Virus record (IMG/VR): IMGVR_UViG_3300046665_000548
Coordinates: 434,001-498,000 of that record
DNA: 64,000 nucleotides
Reading direction: 5' to 3' (one strand)
Shown here: positions 5,486-34,763 of the stretch, piece by piece
Layout of the letters: every line of letters starts with the position of its first letter
Position numbering within the stretch: position 1 is the stretch's first letter
Position numbers and translations under genes: made by a program
The notes under the pieces: model-generated
Databases searched by the model: none
The model's input: only the letters and a program-made list of their open reading frames with translations
What the model was told of the DNA's origin: nothing

Positions 5486-5610
5486 GACCTAGCCTGATCT
5501 CTTCGGTAAGTATCTTCCCATTTCTTACGAAGCTCTGGCGGAAACTCCGAAATCATGGATGCGCGCCCGAAGGCGCGCAATTCGCGTAGTATGATGCGGA
5601 TGATTTTCAT
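5482..5610 (-). CDS. Small ORF (42 aa) downstream of prs containing a cUUCGg hairpin
   Basis: MKIIRIILRELRAFGRASMISEF...; GAGG upstream; fills the intergenic gap. Confidence 0.4.
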   Translation of the reverse strand: MKIIRIILRELRAFGRASMISEFPPELRKKWEDTYRRDQARS

Positions 5611-5622
5611 CTGAGAAATCCC

Positions 5623-6555
5623 TCAAGAGTACAGGCTGGAGACGCTGAGCCCGCCTGACATTCGCGCAATGGCCTCCCCCAGCAATGGCGAGATCGACAG
5701 GACGCGGATGTTCGGAGCGGCAAGAACCGCTTCGGTTGGCATGATTGAATCGGTGATCACCAGTTCTTTCAGCTTCGAGCCGGAGACGCGTTCGACAGCC
5801 GTTCCAGACAGCACGCCGTGCGAGATGTACGCATAGACATCGGTCGCTCCCTGATCGAGCAGGGCGGCTGCCGCGTTGCAGAGCGTTCCACCAGAATCGA
5901 TCATATCGTCAACGAGGATACAGGTCTGCCCCTCGACGCTTCCGATGATGTTCATGACCTCGGATTCGCCTGCGCGCTCGCGGCGCTTGTCCACGATGGC
6001 CAACGGCGCATTGATGCGCTTCGCGAGAGCCCTGGCCCGGACCACACCGCCCACGTCGGGCGACACAACCGTGGTTGACGTGGAATTCAGACGCTGACGG
6101 ATATCTGCCGTGAAGACCGGAGCACCAAACAGGTTATCGGTCGGAATATCGAAAAATCCCTGAATTTGACCAGCATGTAGATCGAGAGTTAGAACATGAT
6201 CAACGCCAGCGTGCGTGATGAGATTAGCAACCAGCTTTGCCGAGATCGGCGTGCGGGCGGCCGACTTTCGATCCTGCCGGGCGTAACCAAAATACGGAAT
6301 AACCGCAATGATTCGGTTGGCGGATGCACGCCGCAGCGCGTCCGTCATGACCAGTAGCTCCATCAGATTGTCGTTGGTCGGAGCCGACGTTGACTGGACC
6401 AGATAAACATCCTCGCCTCGGACGTTTTCTTCAATTTCAACAAAGATTTCCCCATCAGCAAAGCGGCGAACGATAGCCTTGGTCAGCGGCAACTTTAGGT
6501 ATTCGCCAACGGCTTTTGCTAGAGGGATATTGGAGTTACCAGAAATGATTTTCAT
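5623..6555 (-). CDS. prs: Ribose-phosphate pyrophosphokinase (PRPP synthetase)
   Basis: [44 protein letters not shown] motifs; alphaproteobacterial-like. Confidence 0.97.
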
Positions 6556-6585
6556 TGAATGACCATGTGAAAGAATAGGGTCTGT

Positions 6586-6613
6586 ATATTACCACAGTTT
6601 TGTGACACGTCAA
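6586..6613 (-). promoter_or_regulatory. Early promoter TTGACG-N16-TAATAT for prs
   Basis: Matches the recurring motif with TGG before -10. Confidence 0.7.
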
Positions 6614-6670
6614 ATGCTGCGTTGACTTTCCCACAAGTTTGTACCATCAATTGGGCGACTTAGGGAGCCA

Positions 6671-6940
6671 GTGATGCAGGTCATCGTTCGTAACAATAAT
6701 ATCGATCAAGCTCTGCGCGTTCTGAAGAAGAGAATGCAACGAGAGGGTATCTTCCGCGAAATGAAGCAGCGTGAAGCTTACGAAAAGCCGTCCGAGAAAC
6801 GAATCCGTGAGCGCTCGTCGGCCATTGTCAGAGCCAAGGTATCGGCTCGAAAACAAGCAATCCAGGAGGGCTTAATTCCGCCCCCCAAAAAACGGATCAA
6901 ACCGGAAGACAAAAAACGCGAGACGGCCAATGGCAGATGA
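6671..6940 (+). CDS. rpsU: Ribosomal protein bS21
   Basis: [43 protein letters not shown]; alphaproteobacterial-type C-terminal EGLIP tail. Confidence 0.95.
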
Positions 6941-7085
6941 CGTTGCCGGGGAAACATTTCGGTTCACCATCATGATACCGGAATGGGATACCTCAATCAC
7001 CGGCTACGAATGGTGGAACGACTGTATAGTTGATGTCGAAGTCCCAATTGCCGCAAAGGCTGAGACTGCCGACATCAAAAAATGA
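6930..7085 (+). CDS. Small hypothetical protein (51 aa)
   Basis: Overlaps the rpsU end; open frame to TGA at 7083-7085. Confidence 0.45.
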
Positions 7086-7478
7086 TCACTGAAACAGTTT
7101 GGGGATAACCTTGAATGGGATGCGCGGGACTGCATCCCATTTCTTTTCCCGGATCACGTCATTGGACATGGCTGGCTTTGCGCCCTGCTCACGGTCGAGA
7201 GACCATGTGACATGGTAGGTCTTGCCATCCGGTCGCGTGGTAGTGCCGCCAACCTCGCAGACAAGCGCCTGGACGCGTTCGCCATCATTGGCGATACCTA
7301 CCACTACGGCTTGAGTTTCCTCCGGCAGGGGCTCGTCCTCGGTCACCCCAAAGGTGCGCGTGATGTGGTGCGCGACAACATCCGGGTAGACGGCCGGAAA
7401 CAGCGAAAGCAGTCGTGATCGCTCCCCCTCAGGAAGCTCCCATCCATTGTAAAATGACTTTTTCTTCATCATGAACAA
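7086..7478 (-). CDS. 2H phosphoesterase superfamily protein
   Basis: Two HxT motifs (HHIT, YHVTW) about 50 aa apart. Confidence 0.65.
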   Translation of the reverse strand: MFMMKKKSFYNGWELPEGERSRLLSLFPAVYPDVVAHHITRTFGVTEDEPLPEETQAVVVGIANDGERVQALVCEVGGTTTRPDGKTYHVTWSLDREQGAKPAMSNDVIREKKWDAVPRIPFKVIPKLFQ

Positions 7479-7828
7479 CTACCGCTGTCGCGTTCTGCCG
7501 TGGAGAATGATGAGCCGCAACCGCAGCTACCCACTGATTGAGGATTGTTGAATACAAATCCACCGGAGAAGGTATCTTCGCTCCAGTCGATTACTGTGCC
7601 GACAACAGACGGAACAGCAAATCCATCAATAACAAATACAAGACCTTCGTCCAATACTATTGTCTCGTCTTGTTCAGCAATTTCTTCTGCATCGATCACG
7701 CCCATCTCGTATCCGTTTCCACCGCACCCCTTCGAGTTAACAGTGAAATACGCGGTGGTCTCGTTTTGAGCACGAAGGAACGTTGTTAGGCGTGTCTTCG
7801 CGCTTTCAGTTAGTGTTACAGAACTCAT
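7469..7828 (-). CDS. iscA: A-type Fe-S cluster carrier (IscA/HesB family)
   Basis: KGCGGNGY and C-terminal FVFNNPQSVGSCGCGSSF. Confidence 0.9.
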   Translation of the reverse strand: MSSVTLTESAKTRLTTFLRAQNETTAYFTVNSKGCGGNGYEMGVIDAEEIAEQDETIVLDEGLVFVIDGFAVPSVVGTVIDWSEDTFSGGFVFNNPQSVGSCGCGSSFSTAERDSGSCS

Positions 7829-8055
7829 AGTTTCTCCTCGATCAGCGTGATCTCTGCGTCAGTTTCGATCCACAATTTAGCACCGCATGAGAGCGGCTTA
7901 TCGGGACGATAGACCATACGTGATGGTCCGTGAATTTCGACCTCCATGGCATATCGAATGTGCTTCCCATCTTGCACCCGACACACGGGTTCTGTGCGCC
8001 CATGCTTGGCATTTTGTTGGATCACGTTTCGATTGATGTGGATGATCTTTGTCAT
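7825..8055 (-). CDS. Hypothetical phage protein
   Basis: Coupled ORF MTKIIHINRNVI...CGAKLWIET. Confidence 0.65.
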   Translation of the reverse strand: MTKIIHINRNVIQQNAKHGRTEPVCRVQDGKHIRYAMEVEIHGPSRMVYRPDKPLSCGAKLWIETDAEITLIEEKL

Positions 8056-8059
8056 GTGT

Positions 8060-8305
8060 TCACTCAGGCAAAATCAAACGACGATCTTTGTCCATGCACA
8101 GGACTTGATCCAAGGTGTAGCTGTTCTTTCCCGAACCATGCTTCTCTGTGATACTAGCATTGGCGTATCCATGATCGGTGCACCACGTCCGCTGTTCCGC
8201 GCGAATACGATTAGCCTCACGCTTTTCGGGAATGATAACCAAGAAAATCAGCAAAGAAAACGGGATAACAACACCCGCAACACAGAGCAAAAATAAACGC
8301 ATCAT
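8060..8305 (-). CDS. Small membrane-anchored protein
   Basis: N-terminal hydrophobic helix; start reassigned to ATG 8305. Confidence 0.5.
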   Translation of the reverse strand: MMRLFLLCVAGVVIPFSLLIFLVIIPEKREANRIRAEQRTWCTDHGYANASITEKHGSGKNSYTLDQVLCMDKDRRLILPE

Positions 8306-8313
8306 GAAAATCC

Positions 8314-8856
8314 TCAGTATGTAGTAACAATTTTGTCGGCTAAGCCGAGTTTCACTGCTTCCTTCGAGTCTAACCATACGTCTTCCGGAGGCAATAGCTT
8401 TTCTTGAATAACCTTCTCTTTCAGTCCTGTGCACTTTTTGTAGTGCTCCATGATGCGATGCTGAAGAAGACTGAATTCACGCATGGTCGCGAATAGCTCG
8501 TGCTCTTTACCGAATTGGCCCCACGAGTATTGGTGTGAAAGAATGGAGGTGTTTGGTGTAATCACGCGGTGGCCGGGCTTACCGCTAATGAAGAGCAGAA
8601 GACCGCAGCTTGCGATTGATCCGAGACCAACGGTGTGCACGGGAATCTTCGAACCCTTGATCGTGTCGATCAAAGCGAAACAGTCTGGCACGCTTCCGCC
8701 AGGAGAATTAATTACGAAGGTCAGAGATTTCGGGCGTTCATCGCCCTTGGTCAAATTCTTTTCTAGAACAAACCGAATAGCTTTCTCACAGCTACTCGCA
8801 GTGAAATTTTCCATAAACAGGAATACGCCGCTCTTCTCTAAAGGACTGTCAGTCAC
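8314..8856 (-). CDS. Divergent ClpP-like serine protease
   Basis: INSPGGSV, IASCG (catalytic Ser), LSHQY (His), DVWLDSKEAVKLGLADKI. Confidence 0.85.
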   Translation of the reverse strand: MTDSPLEKSGVFLFMENFTASSCEKAIRFVLEKNLTKGDERPKSLTFVINSPGGSVPDCFALIDTIKGSKIPVHTVGLGSIASCGLLLFISGKPGHRVITPNTSILSHQYSWGQFGKEHELFATMREFSLLQHRIMEHYKKCTGLKEKVIQEKLLPPEDVWLDSKEAVKLGLADKIVTTY

Positions 8857-8887
8857 TGAAAATCTTTCAAATAAAATAATGATCTAA

Positions 8888-8916
8888 ATCGTACGAGGGG
8901 AAATCGAAAAGGTCAA
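8888..8916 (-). promoter_or_regulatory. Sigma70-type promoter TTGACC-N17-TACGAT
   Basis: Directly upstream of the clpP-like gene. Confidence 0.5.
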
Positions 8917-8918
8917 AA

Positions 8919-9443
8919 TTAAGTGGTCGGCATTACGCCGTCGAACAGGTATACGACTGGTTGGAAATCGACGCTTTCTTCTTCGATGATTTCCGAAATA
9001 ATTTTCCAAGAACCACCAGCTAGTCCTGCGCCGATCAGGGGGAAAGCTACGGTATCGATACGACCAAAGTAGTTGATAGCTCCCTGAACCTGCGATGCTT
9101 TGGCGGTCGCGTTGATCTGCTGCATGACCTTACGAATCGCATCGTAGTCCGCATATCTCACGCCATCTGGTTCGTACGATTTACGATAGGTCTCCTGGGT
9201 GATCGCGTTGATGATGACGTGCTTTTCGCCCATCACCCAAACTGCCGTGCCGAGTGGAATAAACTTCTCACCTCGGGATATCGCTCCTGCGTGAGCATTC
9301 ATATAGAATTCATACGCGGCCGGTTCTTGTTCGCGAACCTGCTTTGCGATCCCCTTGCCCATCTTGCCTTGGGCGTTGCAGCCATGGCAGATGACTCTCT
9401 CGGGTGCGGCGAGCAGATCGCCGGTCTTATAAATGATCTTCAT
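8919..9443 (-). CDS. Macrodomain protein (ADP-ribose binding/hydrolase, T4 Tk.4-like)
   Basis: GDLL...HGCNAQGKMGKGIA...AFPLIGAGLAGGSW. Confidence 0.88.
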   Translation of the reverse strand: MKIIYKTGDLLAAPERVICHGCNAQGKMGKGIAKQVREQEPAAYEFYMNAHAGAISRGEKFIPLGTAVWVMGEKHVIINAITQETYRKSYEPDGVRYADYDAIRKVMQQINATAKASQVQGAINYFGRIDTVAFPLIGAGLAGGSWKIISEIIEEESVDFQPVVYLFDGVMPTT

Positions 9444-9672
9444 GCAAAATCTTCCTATCGCAAATTAGCTTAAACGCGACAGCGCCTTCATTGGTCTGAA
9501 ATGAGACCTTGGTCGTCTGCCAATCGATTATCCGGATGCTTGGATTCTCCGATCCAAGCTCGCCAAGTCGCCAGACTATCTCAAGCAGATTGTTAATGGC
9601 AACATCTAGTGTCCTGTACAGCGAGCTACCATGTTCGTTGGAGTCAACGGTCTCGATGATGAATTCAATCAT
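9427..9672 (-). CDS. Small paralogue-family protein
   Basis: VSFQTNEGAVAFKLICD. Confidence 0.6.
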   Translation of the reverse strand: MIEFIIETVDSNEHGSSLYRTLDVAINNLLEIVWRLGELGSENPSIRIIDWQTTKVSFQTNEGAVAFKLICDRKILHEDHL

Positions 9673-9919
9673 TAGAAGCCCAGCCGCCCTCCTCGGGCTC
9701 TTCGAAGACCTCGCGCGTCACGGCATCCATCATGGCGCGCTCCAAACTACTGACGATATCTTTCGGTCCATCCTCGGCATCGCATGCGAACGAGCAGGGA
9801 TCGGCGGTCATCGCATATGCTTGTCCAAGCTTATTGAAGTATACCTCGTGAAGACCGTAGCCTTTGTCGTCGCGATATTTCACTATTCGATAGTGCCATG
9901 ACATAATAACTACTCTCAC
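9665..9919 (-). CDS. Hypothetical phage protein
   Basis: WHYRIVK...YGLHEVYF; coupled ORF. Confidence 0.6.
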   Translation of the reverse strand: MRVVIMSWHYRIVKYRDDKGYGLHEVYFNKLGQAYAMTADPCSFACDAEDGPKDIVSSLERAMMDAVTREVFEEPEEGGWASND

Positions 9920-9936
9920 TCGATAATGGAAGTTAC

Positions 9937-10833
9937 GTGGACAAAATTAGACTGAAAGACGTTCCCCTTCACCTTACCACATTCTCGTACATCAGAGAGG
10001 TCTCTGACTGGCGCGATGTGGCTCGAAAGTGCAAGCCGTCTCGCAAGTACCCAGACGTTATTGAGTTCGAAGGAACGTGGATCGATTACCCCAAGCTTCA
10101 ACAGTCTGTCACTGAGGGTTTCGAAACCTTTGGTGAGTTCGGATGGATCAGAACATCTGGGGAGAACAACACCTATACGGGCGTCTCGCTGGTCTACAAT
10201 CCGGATCACCAAGATGGCATCAATATCCACCAGTCCACCTTGGGTACGCCGAAGAACGACGTAGGGCAATATTTTTGGAACAAAACCGATGGTCACGCGG
10301 TGAAGAAGAACAGTTACTTCGACACATATGGCTTTCGTATCCCAACCCCTTTCGCGCAGACCGACTATGTGGGAGAGATTCTGAAGAAATTCACCCTCTC
10401 ACCTATTCGGTCGCGCGTCTCAAACATTCACGCCATTGAACCGGTCGTGAAGGTCGCCAATCCGGACGATCCGATCCGGAATCCGATGGGCTACGACAAG
10501 CGGTGGCACAAAGACGAAACCATTTTCGAGAACGTGCGCATGAACATCCCGATCCGGACTGCGCCGGAATTCATGTTCGAGCTTGACGGCCATGACCCAC
10601 AACATCTGGAAGTCGGCAAACTCTATACCTGGGACACCTATAAGGAACATGGTGTATTCGCGTTGGAGAACACCGGAGCCTGTCGCACCCATATGGTGTT
10701 GGGCTTCTCCCCGTGGTGGCGGTACGACGCGGAAGATGAATCCTGGAGCAAAAACGAGTTCTACGGCAAACATCCCTGGGATATGTACCACGATGGGGAT
10801 ATCTGTCCGGGCTTGATCATATCTAATCTGTAA
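9937..10833 (+). CDS. AspH-like 2OG-Fe(II) oxygenase
   Basis: WHKD (HxD), RMNIPI, WDTYKEHGV (distal His), RTHMVLG (Arg). Confidence 0.65.
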   Translation: MDKIRLKDVPLHLTTFSYIREVSDWRDVARKCKPSRKYPDVIEFEGTWIDYPKLQQSVTEGFETFGEFGWIRTSGENNTYTGVSLVYNPDHQDGINIHQSTLGTPKNDVGQYFWNKTDGHAVKKNSYFDTYGFRIPTPFAQTDYVGEILKKFTLSPIRSRVSNIHAIEPVVKVANPDDPIRNPMGYDKRWHKDETIFENVRMNIPIRTAPEFMFELDGHDPQHLEVGKLYTWDTYKEHGVFALENTGACRTHMVLGFSPWWRYDAEDESWSKNEFYGKHPWDMYHDGDICPGLIISNL

Positions 10834-10839
10834 AAACGC

Positions 10840-10867
10840 TTGACGAAACCTCGTTTCCTGGTAGATT
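10840..10867 (+). promoter_or_regulatory. Early promoter TTGACG-N16-TAGATT
   Basis: Recurring motif upstream of the J-domain gene. Confidence 0.75.
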
Positions 10868-10886
10868 GCTAGAAACGGAGAATCAT

Positions 10887-11642
10887 ATGAGCGGCTTTGA
10901 TCTTTTTCAGAATCCCGATGGTGCCGATTTCCAGGCACAGGCAGTTCTTGCCTACTTGCGTGACCGCCTGGGCTCTGGGATCGAGCAGAGTTGGGACCCC
11001 ACGTATCATCGCTACACGGCAGAGCCGAAGGTAACCCGCTACGACAATGGTCGCGAGCAGGGTTACATCGTGTACATGCGTGGCCGCGATTACAGCGATC
11101 AGATCAACATCGCGTTCTACGAACATCGTAACAGCGACAACATCTGCGCGGTCAAGTCGAACCAGCGCACCTTCAACGCGCCTCTCCTTGACGATATTTT
11201 GAAGGTCATGACGGACAAGTACGACACTACTAAGACCGTGGGCGTCGGTCAGGCGTACGAACTCGCCGGATGGATCGCGGATCAGCTTATCGAGTTTTGG
11301 GATGAGACCGAACTGAACGCGGCAGATCGCACGCGTAAGCGTGAGGAAGAAACCCGTAAGTGGGAGGAATCCGCCGCTAACGCCCGCAAGAAGGCTTACG
11401 AGGAAGATACTAAGCGCAAGGAAGGCGCGCATCGCCGGGCACGCTCCACCGCCCGCAGCGCCCCCCGTAGCTGGTGGGAGGTCCTTGGGGTGACCCGGAA
11501 CTGTACCCAGGCCGAGGCAAGGACGGCTTGGCGCAAGCTGGCCATGAAGAACCATCCGGATAGTGGTGGGGACACGGAGACCATGCAGGAGATCAACGCG
11601 GCATGGACCGAAGCTCAGCGAGGATTCAAGAAGGCTGCATAA
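10887..11642 (+). CDS. Protein with C-terminal DnaJ (J) domain
   Basis: WWEVLGV...AWRKLAMKNHPDSGGD...MQEINAAW (HPD motif); GGAG before ATG 10887. Confidence 0.85.
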   Translation: MSGFDLFQNPDGADFQAQAVLAYLRDRLGSGIEQSWDPTYHRYTAEPKVTRYDNGREQGYIVYMRGRDYSDQINIAFYEHRNSDNICAVKSNQRTFNAPLLDDILKVMTDKYDTTKTVGVGQAYELAGWIADQLIEFWDETELNAADRTRKREEETRKWEESAANARKKAYEEDTKRKEGAHRRARSTARSAPRSWWEVLGVTRNCTQAEARTAWRKLAMKNHPDSGGDTETMQEINAAWTEAQRGFKKAA

Positions 11643-11644
11643 GG

Positions 11645-11671
11645 AAAGGGCGGCCCTAGAGCCGCCCTTTT
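11645..11671. terminator. Bidirectional intrinsic terminator
   Basis: AAAGGGCGGC-cctaga-GCCGCCCTTT(T) between convergent genes. Confidence 0.8.
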
Positions 11672-11882
11672 ACTTGTTGAACCACACGACGTGCGTGGCA
11701 TCAGGTGGCATTTCTTCAATCTTGCTCGGCAACAGATAAACGTCAGGCGCACATTTGCCATTCTTCACCGGATGCCCAAAACCGTCATAGTCGGTGAAGA
11801 AATGATCGCGCACGCTCTCCAGAAAGTCCGCAACCGTGTATATGTCGTCGCCTAGCGTGACCTGTTCGGTGTAGGACGCCAT
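11670..11882 (-). CDS. Hypothetical protein
   Basis: Last gene of the minus-strand operon. Confidence 0.6.
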   Translation of the reverse strand: MASYTEQVTLGDDIYTVADFLESVRDHFFTDYDGFGHPVKNGKCAPDVYLLPSKIEEMPPDATHVVWFNK

Positions 11883-12349
11883 TACGCGTCCTCGTCTTCA
11901 TCTTCGTCGGCAGACTCGGCCTTGGAAATGGCCTCGGCCAGGGGCGTATATGTCGGGCCTAAGCGCCGATCCTCGAAGAGAAACCAGCCGCCATCCTTCC
12001 ACACATAGGTGTATTCGTTGAGGTCACCAGCCTTGATAGCGGCTTTGATGCTGTCGAACACCTTGGTGTCAACATCCTCCTCGCCACGATCTCGACCATA
12101 ATAGGTGGTGTATCCTTTCACGGGCTTGTCGTAACTGTGCCCCGGAGGCTTGTCACACATCGGCCCCAGGGAAGAGATATCGCCGGGCGCAACCAGTGCT
12201 TCTGCAAGCTCCTGCGACGTGTAATGATCCCGCAGGATCACGCCATTGTGGGACAGATAGCCGTCCCAATGGCAGTAGATGCGGCGAGCCTTGCCGTCTG
12301 TACATTCTACGATCACATCACTGCGCGTTCCCATTTGCTCTCCTGCCAA
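11882..12349 (-). CDS. Conserved hypothetical phage protein
   Basis: MGTRS...IYCHWDGYL...LRDHY; acidic tail. Confidence 0.7.
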   Translation of the reverse strand: MAGEQMGTRSDVIVECTDGKARRIYCHWDGYLSHNGVILRDHYTSQELAEALVAPGDISSLGPMCDKPPGHSYDKPVKGYTTYYGRDRGEEDVDTKVFDSIKAAIKAGDLNEYTYVWKDGGWFLFEDRRLGPTYTPLAEAISKAESADEDEDEDA

Positions 12350-12351
12350 GA

Positions 12352-12681
12352 TTAAGAATCAAAGACACCGCACAGCTTGGCATGCAAGGTATCTCGGTTG
12401 AAATGTTCGAAATCGCCTTCGAAGCGGTCAAAGCTGACCTCTCGCGTCGCTCGTCTGGACAGCAATGTCAGCTTCCACCGGCCGCATTCGTAGCGAATGC
12501 GGTCGTGAGTTCGACTGTTCTCCCATGACATAAGGAGGGGATCAGTTATCCAGAAGACACGAATAGTGCGCTGATCGGAAATAGCAACGCGCTTGGCTTC
12601 GGTTGGTCCATAGTTGCCGCCGCCCGGTATAACCGAGCGCCAAGACAGGCAAAGGTCCTGATCAGGTTTCATCAGAATCAA
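12352..12681 (-). CDS. Hypothetical protein (related C-terminus to 14199..14642)
   Basis: FEGDFEHFNRDTLHAKL. Confidence 0.55.
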   Translation of the reverse strand: MILMKPDQDLCLSWRSVIPGGGNYGPTEAKRVAISDQRTIRVFWITDPLLMSWENSRTHDRIRYECGRWKLTLLSRRATREVSFDRFEGDFEHFNRDTLHAKLCGVFDS

Positions 12682-12922
12682 GCAAGCTCTCCAGAATTTT
12701 TACGGCTTCCTCTTTCGTCTCGTATCCGCGAATACCAAGCTGCTTGCGCGTGTCGAAGAACATCTGCGCCATCTTCGCCACTCCGCCCGTGGACATGTTC
12801 AAAAACACGCTGTTGTGGGCGACCTGTGGGCCTGTGAAATGCTCGGCAATGGCTTCGATGGTTTTCGCGCGGCTCATGGGAGGTTCCTCAGACGGAGCAG
12901 TACAATGGTTCTTTGCGGGCAA
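12662..12922 (-). CDS. Hypothetical protein
   Basis: In-operon ORF. Confidence 0.55.
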   Translation of the reverse strand: MPAKNHCTAPSEEPPMSRAKTIEAIAEHFTGPQVAHNSVFLNMSTGGVAKMAQMFFDTRKQLGIRGYETKEEAVKILESLLDSDET

Positions 12923-13457
12923 TCGCCTTGTCGAGCAGGGCGATCAGGTTTTCGCGCTTGTTAGCGAACATTTGGTGCCATTCTTTGACACTGTTGCCCT
13001 TCTCGTGAAAATTGATCTTGTCCCAGGCCCGGCCCTTCGGGGGCTTGCTCTTCTCCGCCGCCCATGCCTTGACGCGCGCCTCCAAATCGATCTCTTCGAG
13101 ATATTTCTTGAGCCGCTTCATGCTGGTGACAGACATGCGGCGTTGCTTGTTGATCAGCTTGCCGACAGGGGAATGCTTGGAGCCTCCGTTCACGTCCGCA
13201 GCTTGCCACCAGGAAAGCCCTAGGACGCCGAATAGGCTGCTTGCGTTGTAGGAGTCGCGATAGTATCCATCGTCGGGATACATCGCGTCATACGCCTCCC
13301 CAACGGCTTCCTGGAGCTTCTTATAAGCGCGGCTGTTGCCGGAGTTCGGATTCTCCTGTGCAAAGATGTCGCGAGCCGCGCAGGCCGCATTGAACCGGGG
13401 CTCCCACTTTGCTCTGGCAGCGTCCGAAATGCTCTTGAGGTAAATGTCAGCGCCCAT
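12888..13457 (-). CDS. Hypothetical protein
   Basis: Likely start MGADIYLKS at 13457. Confidence 0.65.
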   Translation of the reverse strand: MGADIYLKSISDAARAKWEPRFNAACAARDIFAQENPNSGNSRAYKKLQEAVGEAYDAMYPDDGYYRDSYNASSLFGVLGLSWWQAADVNGGSKHSPVGKLINKQRRMSVTSMKRLKKYLEEIDLEARVKAWAAEKSKPPKGRAWDKINFHEKGNSVKEWHQMFANKRENLIALLDKAIARKEPLYCSV

Positions 13458-13713
13458 CGTTATTCTCCAGTTTTGCGTACACCGTATCCATGAGGTCGCG
13501 CCAATCACCGTTGGCTTCCGCCCAATCGTAAAAGCCGGATTCGGTCTGGCCAGCAGCAACAGCGTTGCGCCATGCCGTGCGGAGTTCGTTGGCTGCCTGC
13601 TCGTGCGGCGAGTCGGGCTTCAAAGCGGGGCAAGTTTCATCTTCCCCGTATTTGCACGAGCCTAGGTTCTCACCGAAGTTGCAATGTGTCAGATGTACGC
13701 CGTCGCTGGACAT
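13447..13713 (-). CDS. Hypothetical protein
   Basis: In-operon ORF. Confidence 0.6.
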   Translation of the reverse strand: MSSDGVHLTHCNFGENLGSCKYGEDETCPALKPDSPHEQAANELRTAWRNAVAAGQTESGFYDWAEANGDWRDLMDTVYAKLENNDGR

Positions 13714-14141
13714 TATTTTTTGAATACCTTCTTGAACGTCTCGTCCATGCTCTTGAAGGTTTTGTCCATGCTCTCGCCCATGTCCTTGAACACGTCGTCC
13801 ATGGCGGCGAATTGTTCGTCGGCCTGATCCGTGTATTTTTTGATGAAAGCTTCCGGATCATCGACGTTCTCGGACTCGACCACTTTGCCGTTTTCCGTCC
13901 GAACGAACTTGCGCACACCGTTATCGGTGATGCTGATGCTCACGCTTTCGGTTTTATTCACCGCTCCGCGTGTCCACGTGTAAGAGTTTTCTTGTTCGGC
14001 ATGGAGGCGATCCAAGTAATCGTCCTCAGGCGTGGACTTTTTTCCACTGCCTCCGAATACCGAAGCAAAGCCGTTGCCTATAGCGGCAAGGCCGTCACCA
14101 ATGAGGGCCAGTCCGTCACCGATAACGCTGAGAAATTTCAT
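13713..14141 (-). CDS. Hypothetical protein with short amphipathic repeats
   Basis: IGDGLA repeats at the N-terminus; M(D/G)xxF repeats at the C-terminus. Confidence 0.65.
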   Translation of the reverse strand: MKFLSVIGDGLALIGDGLAAIGNGFASVFGGSGKKSTPEDDYLDRLHAEQENSYTWTRGAVNKTESVSISITDNGVRKFVRTENGKVVESENVDDPEAFIKKYTDQADEQFAAMDDVFKDMGESMDKTFKSMDETFKKVFKK

Positions 14142-14174
14142 ATGATCACGCCCACGGTTTGAATCAGATTACGC

Positions 14175-14202
14175 ATCATGCCACGGTTTAGACATTCGTC
14201 AA
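14175..14202 (-). promoter_or_regulatory. Early promoter TTGACG-N16-CATGAT
   Basis: Heads the 11.7-14.1 kb minus-strand operon. Confidence 0.65.
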
Positions 14203-14642
14203 GCGATTTTTCGGTGGTTCTTCCGGTCTCGAAACAACTTCACAATACAAAGATCGTTTTCGAACTGTCCGAAATCTCCACGAAATCTGATATCTATTAT
14301 GCGCCATCCTTTGGGTGAATTGATCGCGCTATAGTCCACTCGCCAAGACTGTTCTTCATCACTCTTCATCCCAAGAGCGGTATGTTTTACCATGTATTGG
14401 CTCACCCGAAATGAGCGGGTGCCAATCGTTCTCCGGCTTACTAAGTTACTGCGATACTTTTCATAATAGGTGCTCGGTCGGCGCACGAACCAATACAGAA
14501 CATGCACGTGATATTGCTCAAGCTGATGCTCGGTCTTCTTGTGTTGTGATTCGATGAAGCATGTGTTGGGCCACTTTTCTTTACCTAGTGCGAAGCGGCG
14601 CATCATTTTTTGGCTATCCGAGAAATTGGTCGATTTACCCAT
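14199..14642 (-). CDS. Hypothetical protein, possible paralogue-family member
   Basis: IRFRGDFGQFENDLCIVKLFRD. Confidence 0.55.
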   Translation of the reverse strand: MGKSTNFSDSQKMMRRFALGKEKWPNTCFIESQHKKTEHQLEQYHVHVLYWFVRRPSTYYEKYRSNLVSRRTIGTRSFRVSQYMVKHTALGMKSDEEQSWRVDYSAINSPKGWRIIDIRFRGDFGQFENDLCIVKLFRDRKNHRKIA

Positions 14643-14699
14643 GCCATAGTTTTGTAAAACGTCAAGTGTTTTCTATTTGCGTCTTGAACGAAATAGTCG

Positions 14700-14707
14700 T
14701 ATAAATA
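14700..14707 (+). promoter_or_regulatory. T4-like late promoter TATAAATA
   Basis: Perfect T4 gp55 consensus 53 nt upstream of nadM. Confidence 0.65.
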
Positions 14708-14760
14708 ATCACGGATGGCGATAGACGCCTTCCCGTAACATACCGATTAGGAGTCTAATC

Positions 14761-15837
14761 GTGCGCAATAGCACAACAAAAGGCACGCCAGCGCGTGTCG
14801 AAAAACCCCCGTACAATCTCGCCGTCTTCATAGGCCGTTTCCAGCCCTTCCACCCCGGCCATCTGCACGTTTTGCAGAGTGCTTTGGATAGTGCTGACGC
14901 GCTCACAGTTCTGGTCGGCTCCTCGAATGAGCCCCGCACATATCACAATCCGTTCACGTTCGAAGAGCGTAAACGGATGATCGAAGCTAGCCTTGCGCCA
15001 GAGCTTCGGTCACGCGTGCTGATCCTACCCATCCACGATCACATGTACAACAATTCGGCATGGGTCCTGGAAGTGCAGGATGTCGTGAACGAAGCGAAAG
15101 ACCACTTTGGTCTGAAGAATTCAGCCAAGGTCGCGCTCGTCGGTCACAGCAAAGACCACACGAGCTTCTACCTCAAGATGTTCCCTCAGTGGGGAGCTAT
15201 GGAGGTTGGAAATTTCCGCAGCATCAGCGCCACACCGATCCGTGATCTGTTCTTCAATACTCGCACGTACAGTAACTTTTGTCTGTCGGTCGGTGACGAA
15301 CTGGAGCAGCCGGTACTGGACGTTCTCTACAAGTTCGCGAACGAGGAATGCTATCGCGATTTGATCGCGGAGTACGAACACGTCCGTAGACTACAGCAGC
15401 CCTATTTGGGTCTGCCGTATAAGCCGATCTTCCAGACCGTGGATGCCTGCATTGTGCAGTCCGGACACGTGCTGATGATCAAGCGACGCAGCCTTCCTGG
15501 TCGCGGCCTGTGGGCTCTACCGGGCGGGTTCATCAAGGCCGAAGAGACCATCAACGATGGTATGATTCGGATCGTTCGGGACAAGACGAAGATCGAAATC
15601 CCGGAACGTGTTCTTCGGATGTCGATGACGACAAATCGGCGCTTCGATGATCCTCATCGTTCGTCAAGAGGTCGGACTATCACTGACGCTTTCCTGCTTC
15701 GACTTCAGGATAACGTCGAACTGCCTAAGGTGGCCAAGTCAGAAGATATTCAGTGGTGGCCCATCGCGGATGTTCAGCGAAACATGTGCTTTGAAGATCA
15801 CTACTACATTCTGAGCAACCTCCTCAGTATATCGTAA
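14761..15837 (+). CDS. nadM: Bifunctional NMN adenylyltransferase / Nudix ADP-ribose pyrophosphatase (NadM-Nudix)
   Basis: IGRFQPFHPGH, NPFTFEER, ISATPIR; C-terminal GLWALPGGF Nudix domain (Nudix box atypical); AGGAG RBS. Confidence 0.93.
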   Translation: MRNSTTKGTPARVEKPPYNLAVFIGRFQPFHPGHLHVLQSALDSADALTVLVGSSNEPRTYHNPFTFEERKRMIEASLAPELRSRVLILPIHDHMYNNSAWVLEVQDVVNEAKDHFGLKNSAKVALVGHSKDHTSFYLKMFPQWGAMEVGNFRSISATPIRDLFFNTRTYSNFCLSVGDELEQPVLDVLYKFANEECYRDLIAEYEHVRRLQQPYLGLPYKPIFQTVDACIVQSGHVLMIKRRSLPGRGLWALPGGFIKAEETINDGMIRIVRDKTKIEIPERVLRMSMTTNRRFDDPHRSSRGRTITDAFLLRLQDNVELPKVAKSEDIQWWPIADVQRNMCFEDHYYILSNLLSIS

Positions 15838-15927
15838 TCGTTTTCACTATTCCCAATCTACCAGAAGTTCTATAAGACGGCGAGATATACTCGGCGCATG
15901 AACATTACCCCAAAGGAGCCTTTGGCT

Positions 15928-17367
15928 ATGACTAACCTATTTTCTGTTCCCCTACTCGCTCAAGCAACCCGCGCCGAACGCGAAGCATTTGCTCTCGCAA
16001 TGTTCAACAATCCGTGCATCATGACGGACAGTTACAAGGCCAGCCATTACTTGCAGTATCCGCCGAACACCAACTACGTTTATAGCTACATCGAGAGCCG
16101 TGGCGGCCGGTGGGCTAAGACGGTCTGGTTCGGCGCACAGGGCCTAATCAAGAAGCACCTGCGTACGCGCGTGACGCGCGAAATGGTCGAGGTCGCGAAG
16201 CTGTTCTGGGCCGCACACGGCGAGCCCTTTAACTACGACGGCTGGATGTACATCGTTGAGAAATACAAGGGTCGTATCCCGTTGACGATCAAGGCCGCGC
16301 CAGAAGGCATGGTCATCCCGACGCACAACATTCTGCTGTCGGTGATCAACAACGACCCGAACCTCGGCTGGCTCACCAGTTGGTTCGAGACCCTTCTTCT
16401 GCGCGTCTGGCACGCCACGACGGTTTCGACCGGCTCCTGGTACTGCAAGCAGATGATCATGGAAGCTCTGAACGTATCGTCGGATATCCCCGAAGAAGCG
16501 ATCCTGTTCGCTTTGCATGATTTCGGTATGCGCGGTGCGGTCGATTCATCGCTGTCTGGCGCTGGTCACCTTGTCCACTTCATGGGCACCGACAACACCG
16601 AGGGTATCATCGGCGCGATGGCGTTCTACGATGCGCAGATGTGCGGCCTGTCGATCCCCGCTGCCGAACATTCGTCCATCACGTCCTGGGGCCGCGAGAA
16701 CGAGGTCGAGGCGTATCGCAACATGCTTCGCCAGTTCGCCAAGCCCGGCACCATGGTGGCAGTGGTTTCGGACAGCTACGATCTGTGGAACGCCATCGAT
16801 AACCTGTGGGGCGACAAGCTTCGCCAGGAGGTGATCGACAGCGGCGCGGTCGTCGTGGTTCGCCCCGATTCGGGTGATCCGACCGTCGTTCCGATCCAGG
16901 CCATTCAGCGTCTGGATGCGCGCTTCGGTTCGACCGTCAACAGCAAGGGCTATCGCGTTCTCAAGAACGTGAAGGTCATTCAGGGCGACGGCATCACACC
17001 GGACACGATCCCGGTGATCCTGAAGAACCTGCTGGCGGCTGGCTACTCGGCCGAGAACCTTGCCTTCGGTATGGGCGGCGGACTGCACACGGTCGGCATC
17101 GACCGCGACACGCAAAAGTTCGCGATGAAGTGCTCGGCCGCGCTGGTCGATGGTACCTGGATCGATGTGTTCAAGGACCCGGCCACCGATCCTGGCAAGC
17201 GTTCGAAGAAGGGCAAGCTGGCGCTGGTCAAGAACGACGCTGGCGAGTTCGAGACCGTGCCGCTGGAGGGCAACGAGGATCGCGATCTCCTCGTAACCAT
17301 CTACGACAACGGCGACATCGTGAAGGACTGGACCTTCGAAGAGGTTCGCGCCAACGCCGCTGCATAA
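15928..17367 (+). CDS. nadV: Nicotinamide phosphoribosyltransferase (Nampt)
   Basis: TDSYKASH, LHDFG, PAAEHS, VSDSYD, VRPDSGDP, IQGDG, FGMGGG, KKSKKG-like motifs; AAGGAG before ATG 15928. Confidence 0.95.
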   Translation: MTNLFSVPLLAQATRAEREAFALAMFNNPCIMTDSYKASHYLQYPPNTNYVYSYIESRGGRWAKTVWFGAQGLIKKHLRTRVTREMVEVAKLFWAAHGEPFNYDGWMYIVEKYKGRIPLTIKAAPEGMVIPTHNILLSVINNDPNLGWLTSWFETLLLRVWHATTVSTGSWYCKQMIMEALNVSSDIPEEAILFALHDFGMRGAVDSSLSGAGHLVHFMGTDNTEGIIGAMAFYDAQMCGLSIPAAEHSSITSWGRENEVEAYRNMLRQFAKPGTMVAVVSDSYDLWNAIDNLWGDKLRQEVIDSGAVVVVRPDSGDPTVVPIQAIQRLDARFGSTVNSKGYRVLKNVKVIQGDGITPDTIPVILKNLLAAGYSAENLAFGMGGGLHTVGIDRDTQKFAMKCSAALVDGTWIDVFKDPATDPGKRSKKGKLALVKNDAGEFETVPLEGNEDRDLLVTIYDNGDIVKDWTFEEVRANAAA

Positions 17368-17385
17368 ATCATTCATGAAAGGAAC

Positions 17386-17409
17386 AGGGCCGGGATTAAC
17401 CCCGGCCCT
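17386..17409 (+). terminator. GC-rich hairpin after nadV
   Basis: AGGGCCGGG-attaac-CCCGGCCCT; weak U-tract. Confidence 0.55.
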
Positions 17410-17421
17410 AGCCTCGAATGA

Positions 17422-21157: not shown

Positions 21158-22309
21158 TCACGCTACGATCTCCACGACGATCTTTTTCTTCGTCAACACG
21201 TGGCGTTCACCGGCCACGAGAGGCTTAGCCCAACCATTTTTGCGGGCCTGCGAGAGGGATGGAAACATACCAATGGCGACGCAGACGGTCGCCATTGATG
21301 CGCCCGGCCCAAGCTCAGCAATCGAGAATCGACGTGTAGCCGGAATTGGCGTACCGTCGTCCTCAAAGGACGTGAATAGGTTTTCCACGTGATCGTGCAC
21401 CAACGTGGTTACCTGATTGGCGAGCATGATTTTAGCGGCGTTGATGTCGCGAGACATGATCTGTTCGATGATGTCGAGCCGAAGCATCGTGAATAGCTTT
21501 AAGAAGCGCTCCACGTCGCGGTCATCGGTATTGCGCCAGAACTGCCAGAACTCAAAGGGGCTCGTTCGCTCGCGATCCAACCAGACGGCCCCGCCTGCGG
21601 TCTTTCCCATCTTGTCACCAGAAGCGGTCTGGATCAGCGGACACGTTAGGCCGAACAACTGCTTACCGTCCATGCGGCGGGCGAGGTCAATACCGTTGAT
21701 GATGTTGCCCCATTGATCGGAGCCGCCCATCTGGAGCGTGCAGTCAAACCTGCGGTTCAACGTCATGAAATCGAATGCCTGGAGAACCATGTAGTTGAAT
21801 TCCAGCAGGGACATCTCCTGCTGACGTTCCAGTCGCCCCTTAACGCTGTCCATGGCGAGCATGCGGTTTACGGAAAAATGCGTGCCGACCTCTCGCAGAA
21901 ACGAGATGAAGTTCAGATGCTGCAACCAATTGGCATTGTCGAGCACCCATGCGCCGGTTGGCTCTGTAAAATCGCGTATCTTGAGGAAGCGCCCGAATAC
22001 CTTACTAAGGCTGTCTTTGTTAGCCTCAATCTGTTCGACAGTCAGAATCTTTCGTGTAGCGTCTTTCCCCGAAGGGTCGCCCACCATGGACGTTCCGCCA
22101 CCCAGCAGGACGACAGGTGTGTGACCGCACTGCTGAAACCAGTGCAGCATCATGATCGGCAGCAGTGAGCCGACGTGCAGCGATGGCGCTGTGCAGTCAA
22201 ATCCGATATAGCCGACTGACGGCTTCGAAAGCTGCGCACGTAGTCCGGCCTCGTCCGTGCACTGATGCACGAAACCACGCTCTTGCATTATAGTCAAAAA
22301 ATCCATCAT
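21158..22309 (-). CDS. tyrS: Tyrosyl-tRNA synthetase
   Basis: YIGFDCTAPSLHVGS, EFNYMVLQAFD, QMGGSDQWGNI, KMGKT; start reassigned to ATG 22309 just after the promoter -10. Confidence 0.96.
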   Translation of the reverse strand: MMDFLTIMQERGFVHQCTDEAGLRAQLSKPSVGYIGFDCTAPSLHVGSLLPIMMLHWFQQCGHTPVVLLGGGTSMVGDPSGKDATRKILTVEQIEANKDSLSKVFGRFLKIRDFTEPTGAWVLDNANWLQHLNFISFLREVGTHFSVNRMLAMDSVKGRLERQQEMSLLEFNYMVLQAFDFMTLNRRFDCTLQMGGSDQWGNIINGIDLARRMDGKQLFGLTCPLIQTASGDKMGKTAGGAVWLDRERTSPFEFWQFWRNTDDRDVERFLKLFTMLRLDIIEQIMSRDINAAKIMLANQVTTLVHDHVENLFTSFEDDGTPIPATRRFSIAELGPGASMATVCVAIGMFPSLSQARKNGWAKPLVAGERHVLTKKKIVVEIVA

Positions 22310-22314
22310 GTCGC

Positions 22315-22342
22315 AGATTACCATGTAACAAACTTTTGGCAA
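22315..22342 (-). promoter_or_regulatory. Early promoter TTGCCA-N16-TAATCT (probably leaderless tyrS mRNA)
   Basis: ATG lies 5 nt after the -10 hexamer. Confidence 0.65.
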
Positions 22343-33672: not shown

Positions 33673-34416
33673 CTACTCGTCTTCTTTCTTCCCGCCGTCG
33701 ATGATCGTTGGCTTAAATGCTGGCCTAACGATCTCGGCTTCGTCCTTCTCAGTCTCGACCATCGTATCCAAACTGAATGCCCACTTCGGCGTCTTTGTCA
33801 GATCAGCATCCTCTGGCGGGATAACGTCCAATGTAGACGAATCATCCCTATTCCACCATGGCTTGTCAAAATAGTTTCGCTCTCCCATCCAACGATCCAT
33901 CGACGGAAGTAACTTGGTGGCGTCTCCTACGAAGGTGAAGCTCAAGCCAATGGGATTGTCAGACTTTATTTCGACCAGTCCGAATTCTACAGCATCCCCG
34001 CCAAGAGCGTTGAGTTTTGCCTGAAAAAGCGCTGCTAGAACATCATCGGTAGGATCGCCCGGCGTAATCATCAGAACGTTTGCTGTTCTATTCTTGCCTT
34101 CATCGTTGATGACTATTCCTAGTGCCTCTTCATTGTCACTCGAAAAAGCAATACTGCGAGAAACGATGCTATCGAACCAAAACTTCACCTTTGTCATGAC
34201 ATTGTTGAGTTGTGCTTCAGTCACGTCATCGTTGGGACAAACGTCAGCACGGATATGAAGCCGCGACGGCAGCATTACATTATCCGCAAGTCTAATGAGA
34301 CTTATGCGAGTATGAAAGCTAATGAATAGAGCTTCGCCATCATCATCGTCATCAATTGGGATCATTCGCATCTTTCTTCTTGTCGGCCCCTGGACCGAAC
34401 GTGTGATTTTCTTCAA
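33673..34416 (-). CDS. Conserved-looking hypothetical protein
   Basis: 247-aa ORF directly upstream of the DnaE-like gene. Confidence 0.7.
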   Translation of the reverse strand: MKKITRSVQGPTRRKMRMIPIDDDDDGEALFISFHTRISLIRLADNVMLPSRLHIRADVCPNDDVTEAQLNNVMTKVKFWFDSIVSRSIAFSSDNEEALGIVINDEGKNRTANVLMITPGDPTDDVLAALFQAKLNALGGDAVEFGLVEIKSDNPIGLSFTFVGDATKLLPSMDRWMGERNYFDKPWWNRDDSSTLDVIPPEDADLTKTPKWAFSLDTMVETEKDEAEIVRPAFKPTIIDGGKKEDE

Positions 34417-34755: not shown

Positions 34756-34763
34756 TATTTATA
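34756..34763 (-). promoter_or_regulatory. Late promoter TATAAATA (leaderless candidate)
   Basis: Perfect T4 consensus. Confidence 0.65.

What the first reader, a model, noticed from the sequence alone, without database searches (positions are those of the whole stretch)
5623..17367. Complete phage NAD+ recycling loop from ADP-ribose and nicotinamide
Seen: prs (5623-6555), NadM-Nudix (14761-15837) and Nampt (15928-17367). Established: Nampt plus Nmnat is the NARP2-type pathway that counters NAD-depleting defences (Thoeris, DSR, SIR2-type effectors). Inference: the Nudix domain converts ADPR to ribose-5-P, the phage Prs makes PRPP, Nampt makes NMN and NadM makes NAD+. The phage could therefore rebuild NAD+ from both cleavage products without host PRPP, extending NARP2. 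The nadM-nadV operon sits behind a perfect TATAAATA late-type box, which is unexpected for a counter-defence unit. The Nudix box looks atypical.
Basis: partly seen in the sequence, partly recalled or inferred. Interest (0 to 1): 0.66.

Follow-up and report, generated by a model that had tools for sequence, protein, structure and literature searches.

The report
Phage NAD salvage with dead Nudix
A 608-kb phage carries the known two-enzyme NAD+ rebuilding pair and a genuine PRPP synthetase, but the domain meant to feed ADP-ribose into the loop has lost its catalytic residues, so the proposed self-contained loop is only partly there.

Summary
All three genes are real. They are a class I PRPP synthetase (5623-6555, minus strand), a NadM-Nudix NMN adenylyltransferase (14761-15837) and a NadV/Nampt (15928-17367). 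They lie in a 607,744-bp virus record. NadM and NadV form a NARP2-type pair. Prs is a true Prs, not the Adps of NARP1.

The loop as proposed breaks at its first step. The Nudix box of NadM reads RIVRDKT where 117 of the 120 closest homologues read RELxEET, so all three catalytic glutamates are gone. Two relatives (84% and 80% identity) share this change. The domain is still under purifying selection (dN/dS 0.07-0.18), so it is inert but kept.

These three phages also carry a stand-alone NadM-type Nudix with an intact box, 224 kb away and outside the window. Relatives with an intact NadM Nudix lack that extra gene.

Prs has its own conserved sigma-70-type promoter. It is widespread in a clade of huge phages and usually sits next to ClpP, not NadV. 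NadM and NadV lie within 10 kb of prs in 1 of 80 loci.

In relatives the TATAAATA box occupies the -10 position of a sigma-70-type promoter, so it need not mean late expression.

Verdict: partly supported; a new variant of a known kind.

The parts
5623..6555 (-). prs: class I ribose-phosphate diphosphokinase (PRPP synthetase), 310 aa
   Evidence: NF002320 478 bits against a cut-off of 297. PDB 3DAH 378 bits and E. coli 4S2U 356 bits; the DLHA, DKRR-loop and DDMIDSGGT motifs are kept. It is the only Pribosyltran_N and Pribosyltran gene in the genome. NARP1 Adps proteins score only 112-130 bits on the same model and form a separate clade with 100/99 support.
6586..6613 (-). Sigma-70-type promoter-like site in front of prs: TTGACG, 16 nt, TG-n-TAATAT
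   Evidence: Found by the consensus scan, 9 of 12 matches with a TG extension. The same TTGACG-N16-TGG-TAAnAT is kept upstream of prs in both relatives, L024 and L023.
5561..5578 (-). GC-rich hairpin (7-bp stem, TTCG loop) 45 nt after the prs stop codon; possible transcript end
   Evidence: Read directly from the sequence. The terminator scan did not call it because there is no T run. Its function is inferred.
8919..9443 (-). Macro-domain protein (DarG/TARG1-like, 174 aa) in the same leftward gene block; an ADP-ribose-handling neighbour
   Evidence: Pfam Macro 27.7 bits against a cut-off of 22. NCBIfam DarG antitoxin 42.5 bits, below its cut-off of 250. PDB DarG macrodomains 5M3I and 5M31. It is syntenic next to ClpP in L022 and L023.
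14678..14707 (+). Promoter region of nadM-nadV: TTGCGT, 16 nt, TATAAATA (box at 14700-14707)
   Evidence: The box and a TTGC -35-like element at 16-17 nt are kept in L022 and L023. More distant relatives have TTGAC(A/G/C)-N17-TATAAA, TATAAG or TAAATA at the same place; L032 has TTGACA-N17-TATAAATA.
14717..14729 (+). 13-bp palindrome GGCGATAGACGCC just after the box; possible operator or 5' hairpin
   Evidence: Conserved in L022 and L023 and unique in the 608-kb genome. Its function is unknown.
14761..15837 (+). nadM-Nudix: NMN adenylyltransferase fused to a Nudix domain
   Evidence: PDB 2QJO 254 bits over residues 17-355. None of the 41 conserved NMNAT columns is changed, and the GRFQPFHPGH and SATPIR motifs are kept.
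15523..15594 (+). Degenerate Nudix box (residues 255-278): the REx2EE core reads RIVRDK
   Evidence: 117 of the 120 closest homologues have RELxEET. Only this protein and P0002 and P0003 differ. 16 of 60 conserved Nudix columns are changed. dN/dS of the domain is 0.07-0.18.
15928..17367 (+). nadV: nicotinamide phosphoribosyltransferase (Nampt), 479 aa
   Evidence: NAMPT_N and NAPRTase domains; NF006629 585 bits for the frame from 15898. 38-40% identical to the Nampts of RB16 and Vibrio phage F86, but 24-26% to NARP1 Namats, which form their own 100/100 clade. It is the only NAPRTase-family gene in the genome.
17385..17410 (+). 11-bp GC-rich hairpin 18 nt after the nadV stop codon; likely end of the two-gene unit
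   Evidence: Listed by the scan for the minus strand, where the T run lies. Read on the plus strand it directly follows nadV. Its function is inferred.

Best explanation
The region holds two separate modules that fit together biochemically.

Module 1 is a two-gene nadM-nadV unit of the NARP2 type. NadV joins nicotinamide and PRPP to make NMN, and the intact NMNAT half of NadM adenylates NMN to NAD+. The Nudix half of NadM has lost the three metal-binding glutamates. It most likely hydrolyses neither ADP-ribose nor NAD(H). It is kept under purifying selection as a non-catalytic module, either structural or ligand-binding.

Module 2 is prs, a genuine PRPP synthetase with its own sigma-70-type promoter. 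It is a widespread gene in a large clade of huge phages. It probably raises PRPP supply during infection, both for host nucleotide salvage enzymes and for the phage's only own PRPP user, NadV. That would ease the PRPP cost noted for NARP2.

If ADP-ribose is recycled at all, the ribose-5-phosphate must come from a stand-alone NadM-type Nudix hydrolase (genome 224,304-224,870, outside the window) or from host ADPRase.

Both promoters look like host-RNA-polymerase (early) promoters.

Shown by computation: gene identities, loss of the motif, purifying selection, the distribution across relatives, and conservation of the promoter motifs. Inferred: all enzyme activities, the timing of expression, and the counter-defence role.
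For: - Gene identities.
- The Nudix box lacks E271, E274 and E275, while 117 of 120 homologues keep them. Three independent assemblies share the change.
- Nudix dN/dS is 0.07-0.18, against 0.07-0.17 for the NMNAT half and 0.11-0.12 for NadV.
- Perturbed Nudix signatures go with loss of ADPRase activity. In Slr1690, restoring the signature raised kcat 600-fold (PMC2330246).
- The stand-alone Nudix best matches the Nudix half of NadM enzymes and has an intact VRELDEET. It is conserved in the same two relatives.
- G003 and G005, whose NadM Nudix is intact, have no separate copy.
- Prs is distinct from Adps.
- The prs promoter is conserved.
- Prs is found on 465 IMG/VR contigs that share many other genes with this phage. 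ClpP lies beside prs in 24 of 80 loci.
- The genome has no other Pribosyltran gene and only one NAPRTase-family gene.
- The PRPP cost of NARP2 is stated in bioRxiv 10.1101/2024.02.11.579819.
Against: - No biochemistry was done. A few Nudix-fold enzymes work with altered boxes, and one acidic residue (D274) remains.
- The link between Prs and NadV is weak in genomic terms. NadM and NadV lie within 10 kb of prs in 1 of 80 loci.
- None of 7 Prs-bearing fragments of 100 kb or more has NadV, and two complete huge phages have Prs without NadV.
- The complementary distribution of the stand-alone Nudix rests on 3 against 2 genomes.
- Only Pfam Pribosyltran and NAPRTase were searched as PRPP users.
- The genome encodes a gp55-like sigma factor, and TATAAATA is enriched in its intergenic DNA. 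Late transcription of nadM-nadV therefore cannot be excluded.
Confidence: 0.6

Rival explanations
1. The Nudix domain of NadM itself cleaves ADP-ribose to AMP and ribose-5-P, Prs makes PRPP, NadV makes NMN and NadM makes NAD+. This would be a dedicated three-gene closed loop.
For: All three enzymes are encoded. The same logic was proposed for bacterial prs-nadV and nadM-nadV regulons (PMC2330246). In G003, G005, G006 and L032 a NadM homologue is found together with Prs and NadV, and its Nudix box is intact (RELREET) in the three where it was read (G003, G005, G006). There the model is plausible.
Against: In this phage and its two close relatives the catalytic glutamates are replaced: RE..EE becomes R(I/V)..DK. 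prs is on the other strand with its own promoter, and it is not linked to nadV in most relatives.
Confidence: 0.07
2. Prs has nothing specific to do with NAD+. It is a general nucleotide-supply gene of huge phages, providing PRPP for host purine and pyrimidine salvage to feed replication of a 608-kb genome. Its nearness to nadM-nadV is coincidence.
For: Prs occurs on 465 related viral contigs, mostly without NadV nearby, and ClpP is its conserved neighbour. LR756501 and LR756511 have Prs but no NadV. Of 7 other complete Prs-bearing huge phages, 4 have a clear NadV, against a 33% background in jumbo phages (PMC9503650). My own binomial arithmetic gives P about 0.17, which is not significant.
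Against: The phage encodes no other enzyme of the two phosphoribosyltransferase families searched, so NadV is its only detected own PRPP user. Both complete IMG/VR relatives with Prs also carry NadM and NadV. prs lies within 8-13 kb of nadM in this lineage, L032 and G006. This rival overlaps the best explanation; the two differ only in emphasis.
Confidence: 0.28
3. The prs-like and Nampt-like genes are a NARP1 pair. Adps would pyrophosphorylate ADP-ribose and Namat would join ADPR-PP to nicotinamide.
For: NARP1 proteins carry the same Pfam annotations. NF006629 does not separate Namat from Nampt: Namats score 433-476 bits.
Against: The window's Prs scores 478 bits on NF002320, against 112-130 for Adps. 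It is about 55% identical to bacterial Prs and 26-28% to Adps, and the Adps clade is separate with 100/99 support. The two genes are not adjacent, whereas 97% of Adps genes have a Namat beside them. NadV is 24-26% identical to Namats and lies outside their clade.
Confidence: 0.02
4. nadM-nadV is a late, gp55-dependent unit that replenishes NAD+ late in infection, rather than an early counter-defence.
For: There is a perfect TATAAATA conserved in three relatives. The genome encodes a gp55-like sigma factor (phrog_234, 68 bits). It has 23 boxes against about 6 expected, 14 of them in the 9% of the genome that is intergenic.
Against: In L032, G003, G005 and G006 the same position is the -10 of a promoter with a consensus TTGAC -35 element at 17 nt. 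This lineage keeps TTGC at 16-17 nt. The genes behind other boxes are not clearly structural. From memory, the KVP40 genes are early or delayed-early (Lee et al. 2017); that paper is not held.
Confidence: 0.2

Closest known systems
NARP2 (Vibrio phage KVP40 NadV + NatV; Osterman et al. 2024, bioRxiv 10.1101/2024.02.11.579819)
   Same: A Nampt-clade phosphoribosyltransferase and a NadM-type NMNAT-Nudix fusion are encoded together. The chemistry is the same: nicotinamide plus PRPP gives NMN, which is adenylated to NAD+.
   Different: The Nudix half here lacks its catalytic glutamates. From memory, KVP40 NatV is reported active on ADPR, NAD+ and NADH. This phage also encodes a genuine Prs and a separate NadM-type Nudix, neither of which is part of NARP2 as described.
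Bacterial NrtR-controlled prs-nadV and nadM-nadV operons (Rodionov et al. 2008, PMC2330246)
   Same: The same enzyme set, and the same proposed logic that ADPR gives ribose-5-P for PRPP, which feeds NadV. A dedicated Prs for nicotinamide salvage is already known in Shewanella, Acinetobacter, Chromobacterium and Cytophaga.
   Different: Here prs and nadV are not in one operon, no NrtR regulator was found nearby, and the setting is a virus.
NrtR-type non-catalytic Nudix domains
   Same: The domain is related to ADPR pyrophosphatases and has a perturbed Nudix signature, yet it is retained. In NrtR it binds ADPR as an effector without hydrolysing it.
   Different: Here the domain is fused to an enzyme (NMNAT), not to a DNA-binding domain. 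ADPR binding was not tested.
NARP1 (Adps + Namat)
   Same: It carries the same Pfam labels (Prs-like and Nampt-like) and has the same overall aim of rebuilding NAD+ from ADPR and nicotinamide.
   Different: Adps and Namat are adjacent, divergent, phage-specific clades. The window's proteins fall outside both.

Membership tests
NARP2 | Nampt of the KVP40-type clade, not the Namat clade | tested here: met
   38-40% identity to the Nampts of RB16 and Vibrio phage F86, against 24-26% to two Namats. The Namats form a 100/100 clade that excludes the window's protein. Only two reference sequences were used per class.
NARP2 | An Nmnat homologue encoded in the same phage | tested here: met
   It is adjacent upstream, and none of the 41 conserved NMNAT columns is changed.
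NARP2 | Restores NAD+ and overcomes Thoeris, DSR2 or SIR2 defences | not testable with these tools
   This needs infection assays.
Bifunctional NadM-Nudix (NMNAT / ADPR pyrophosphatase; NF003786, PDB 2QJO) | N-terminal NMNAT with the HxGH and SxTxxR motifs | tested here: met
   GRFQPFHPGH and SATPIR are present.
Bifunctional NadM-Nudix (NMNAT / ADPR pyrophosphatase; NF003786, PDB 2QJO) | Nudix signature with the REx2EE glutamates | tested here: not met
   The core reads RIVRDK, while 117 of 120 homologues keep RELxEET. The conserved GGDDA-like loop is also changed.
Bifunctional NadM-Nudix (NMNAT / ADPR pyrophosphatase; NF003786, PDB 2QJO) | Score above the curated equivalog cut-off | tested here: not met
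   376.9 bits against a cut-off of 397.
Class I PRPP synthetase (Prs) | Full-length match above the curated cut-off, with the catalytic loop and the ribose-5-P loop | tested here: met
   NF002320 478 bits against 297; TIGR01251 377 against 113. DLHA, DKRR and DDMIDSGGT align with E. coli and Burkholderia Prs.
NARP1 | An Adps-clade protein with an adjacent Namat | tested here: not met
   The two genes lie 9.4 kb apart on opposite strands.
T4-type late promoter | A TATAAATA box plus a gp55-type sigma factor in the genome | tested here: inconclusive
   Both are present. However, in relatives the box aligns with the -10 of sigma-70-type promoters. Timing was not testable.

The most novel reading that the evidence does not exclude
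The inert Nudix domain fused to NMNAT may be an ADP-ribose sensor. It would bind the ADPR released by NADase defences without destroying it, and switch on or tune NAD+ synthesis. That would be an enzyme-fused counterpart of the NrtR effector domain. Hydrolysis of ADPR would be left to the stand-alone paralogue, and Prs would close a four-enzyme cycle that rebuilds NAD+ from ADPR, nicotinamide and ATP without host PRPP.
Probability: 0.15. Interest if true: 0.75.

Novelty: new variant of a known kind. Interest (0 to 1): 0.45.

Why it matters
NARP2 is thought to be costly because it drains PRPP. A phage that brings its own PRPP synthetase would remove that cost, and this can be tested directly. 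No paper in the held library links a genuine Prs to phage NadV and NadM. The logic is already known from bacterial prs-nadV operons.

The clearer new point is evolutionary. One huge-phage lineage has disabled the Nudix half of NadM while keeping it under selection, and it carries a separate intact Nudix of the same type. This argues against assuming that every annotated 'bifunctional NadM/ADPR pyrophosphatase' in phages hydrolyses ADPR. It also offers a natural separation-of-function variant for asking what the Nudix half does in NAD+ counter-defence.

Tried and rejected
- Megablast of both loci against INPHARED phages gave no match.
- The KVP40 paper (Lee et al. 2017) is not held. Statements about NatV activity and timing are from memory and are marked as such.
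- The contigs behind L022 and L023 could not be searched whole. I walked along one with the look-up of encoding contigs instead.
- NF006629 does not separate Namat from Nampt, so I used identities and a small tree.
- Microcystis phage MaAM05, the only cultured 'phage' with a true Prs, has bacterial-looking neighbours (dinB, trpG, gsiC). I did not count it.
- Many high-identity Prs hits labelled as Listeria, Staphylococcus or Enterococcus phage are unannotated short contigs. I did not count them either.
- The genome has no NAD-dependent ligase and no PnuC, so neither a 'NAD+ for the phage ligase' rationale nor NARP3 applies.
- The sequencing-run search found one DNA holder with a 0.05 share of words and no RNA run. 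Read laying was therefore not used, and no expression data exist.
- The genes behind other TATAAATA boxes gave no clear late or structural signal.
- The big representative-protein search, structure prediction and complex prediction were not run.


Full report
**What the window is.** The window is positions 434,001-498,000 of a single 607,744-bp virus record, rated complete by CheckV. It holds a T4-like baseplate wedge gene, tail genes, a tyrosyl-tRNA synthetase, a CCA-adding enzyme and an RNA ligase. It is therefore a huge phage. Megablast found no close relative among GenBank phages.

**The three genes.** All are real and intact.
- prs (5623-6555) is on the minus strand. It scores 478 bits on NCBIfam NF002320 (cut-off 297). 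It aligns end to end with the Prs of Burkholderia (3DAH) and E. coli (4S2U), and the catalytic and ribose-5-phosphate loops are kept.
- NadM-Nudix (14761-15837) starts at a GTG 6 nt after AGGAG. It aligns over residues 17-355 with Synechocystis NadM-Nudix, PDB 2QJO.
- NadV starts at 15928, where an AAGGAG precedes the ATG, and has the length of its relatives.
- Each gene is single-copy. NadV is the only PRPP-using enzyme I could find, since the genome has no other Pribosyltran or NAPRTase family member.

**NARP1 or NARP2.** NARP1 uses a Prs-like Adps and a Nampt-like Namat, so this had to be tested.
- Two Adps proteins from phages with the adjacent pair score only 112-130 bits on the Prs model.
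- They are 26-28% identical to the window's Prs.
- They sit on a long branch with 100/99 support, apart from all huge-phage Prs.
- The window's NadV is 38-40% identical to T4-type phage Nampts and 24-26% to Namats. The Namats form their own 100/100 clade.
- The pair is therefore NARP2-type, with nadM directly upstream of nadV.

**The Nudix domain.** This is where the proposed loop fails.
- The canonical core RE-x2-EE reads RIVRDK here.
- In an alignment of the 120 closest proteins from a 5.8-billion-sequence collection, 117 read RELxEET. The only exceptions are this protein and two relatives of 84% and 80% identity.
- Those two come from independent assemblies, a Logan run and a JGI metagenome, that are syntenic with the window. 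Sequencing error is therefore excluded.
- None of the 41 strongly conserved NMNAT columns is changed. In the Nudix half, 16 of 60 are changed, including all three glutamates and a conserved GGDDA-like loop.
- The domain is nevertheless not decaying. Identity among the three relatives is 82-84% in the Nudix half against 80-85% in the NMNAT half. dN/dS is 0.07-0.18 against 0.07-0.17 for the NMNAT half and 0.11-0.12 for NadV.
- The conserved D-x-P-x-R-S-x-R-G-R-T-I-T stretch is kept. I take this stretch to be part of the ligand site, by analogy with related ADPRases; that is inference.
- Perturbed signatures in the related NrtR family go with loss of ADPRase activity but retained ADPR binding. 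Restoring the signature of Slr1690 raised its rate 600-fold (PMC2330246).
- I conclude that the domain is very probably not a hydrolase, yet it still does something.

**A second Nudix gene.**
- The genome has five further Nudix genes.
- One of them (genome 224,304-224,870, 188 aa, outside the window) best matches the Nudix half of NadM enzymes. It scores 79 bits on NF003786 and matches Francisella NadM (2QJT). Its VRELDEET core and an AADDA loop are intact.
- It is only 23% identical to NadM's own Nudix domain, so it is not a recent copy.
- Its close homologues (64-71% identity, intact boxes) come from the same JGI sample and from a sister Logan run (SRR13312978) of the run that yielded the other dead-Nudix NadM.
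- In two complete relatives with an intact NadM Nudix (G003 and G005), the only match to this protein is NadM's own Nudix domain.
- The numbers are small (3 against 2). The pattern still fits a transfer of ADPRase activity to a separate gene.

**How prs relates to nadM-nadV.**
- prs lies 8.2 kb from nadM on the opposite strand, at the far end of a block of about 20 mostly unknown genes.
- It has a sigma-70-type promoter, TTGACG-N16-TGG-TAATAT. This is conserved in both close relatives.
- A GC hairpin follows prs.
- In GenBank phages, true Prs occurs essentially only in uncultured phages of 595-735 kb. Two of these five have a clear NadV, one has only a 28% NAPRTase-like gene, and two have none.
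- In IMG/VR, 465 contigs encode a Prs of 57-70% identity. Most share 10-20 other genes with this phage around prs, so they are real relatives.
- ClpP is the neighbour of prs in 24 of 80 loci. NadM and NadV lie within 10 kb in only one locus, L032.
- Both complete IMG/VR genomes with Prs (453 and 500 kb) carry NadM and NadV, and so does one fragment.
- None of 7 fragments of 100 kb or more (31-60% complete) does. If NadV were always present at a random place, I calculate about a 2% chance of that result.
- Against the 33% background of NadV in jumbo phages (PMC9503650), 4 of 7 other complete Prs-bearing genomes is not significant. My arithmetic gives P about 0.17.
- Prs is thus a clade-wide gene whose product NadV can use, not a dedicated part of the NAD+ unit.

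**The promoter.**
- TATAAATA at 14700 is conserved in the two close relatives, together with a TTGC element 16-17 nt upstream and a unique palindrome downstream.
- Points for a T4-type late promoter: the genome encodes a gp55-like sigma factor. The box occurs 23 times against about 6 expected, and 14 of those are intergenic.
- Points against: in L032, G003, G005 and G006, nadM is preceded by TTGAC(A/G/C), 17 nt, then TATAAA, TATAAG or TAAATA. L032 has TTGACA-N17-TATAAATA.
- The simplest reading is that the box is the -10 element of a host-type promoter, like that of prs. This removes the 'unexpected late expression' puzzle.
- No RNA data exist to settle the point.

**Comparison with what is known.**
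- NARP2 is established.
- The idea that ADPR yields ribose-5-phosphate for a dedicated Prs feeding NadV was proposed in 2008 for bacterial prs-nadV operons.
- Surveys of NAD+ systems in phages mention NadV, NadM and NadR, but not Prs and not an inactive NadM Nudix.
- I therefore rate the finding as a new variant of a known kind, of moderate interest.

Noticed in passing
window 8314-9443 (-): A ClpP-like protease (8314-8856) and a DarG/TARG1-like macrodomain protein (8919-9443) sit side by side, also in both close relatives. A DarG-like macrodomain in a phage could reverse DNA ADP-ribosylation by DarT-type defences.
   Followed up: partly
window 34756-34763 (-) with ORF 34352-34750 (-); also genome 77862, 82325, 358793, 379756: Five of the genome's 23 TATAAATA boxes lie only 4-6 nt before an ATG that opens an ORF. 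If these are gp55-type promoters, transcripts would start at or next to the start codon, giving leaderless mRNAs.
   Followed up: partly
genome 81353-82084 and 379769-380500 (outside the window): Two 243-aa homing-endonuclease-like paralogues each follow a TATAAATA box.
   Followed up: no
window 14717-14729 (+): The 13-bp palindrome GGCGATAGACGCC lies just downstream of the nadM promoter box. It is conserved in relatives and unique in the 608-kb genome. It may be an operator or a 5' hairpin.
   Followed up: partly
genome 567158-567634, 147547-148068, 70880-72160, 215463-216056, 100873-101415 (outside the window): The genome holds a NADAR-domain gene and four more Nudix genes. One of them has a KEVKEET box of the NadM-like type. 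The phage thus has a large ADP-ribose-handling toolkit.
   Followed up: partly
L024:13745-13990 (-) and L024:11766-13697 (-): The 220-kb relative carries a ribosomal protein S21 gene and an AAA ATPase inserted between the ClpP block and prs. Both are absent at that place in the window.
   Followed up: no
window 21158-22342 (-), 48725-49858 (+), 58123-59346 (-): The window holds a tyrosyl-tRNA synthetase, a CCA-adding tRNA nucleotidyltransferase and an RnlA-like RNA ligase. No tRNA gene was found in the 64 kb.
   Followed up: no
L019 (LR756502 135162-135581) and L133 (LR756502 431129-431488): In this 642-kb phage an NMNAT-only gene lies next to NadV, and a NadM-type Nudix (42% identical to the stand-alone one here) lies 296 kb away. 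This is another split arrangement of the two NadM halves.
   Followed up: no
L026 (MW495066, Microcystis phage MaAM05, 77598-94533): The region around prs in this 'phage' record is annotated with dinB, trpG and a glutathione transport permease. It looks like bacterial DNA.
   Followed up: no
genome 390965-391273 (-) (outside the window): A gp55-like late sigma factor homologue (phrog_234, 68 bits) lies in a 295-aa frame. That is much longer than the 185 aa of T4 gp55.
   Followed up: no
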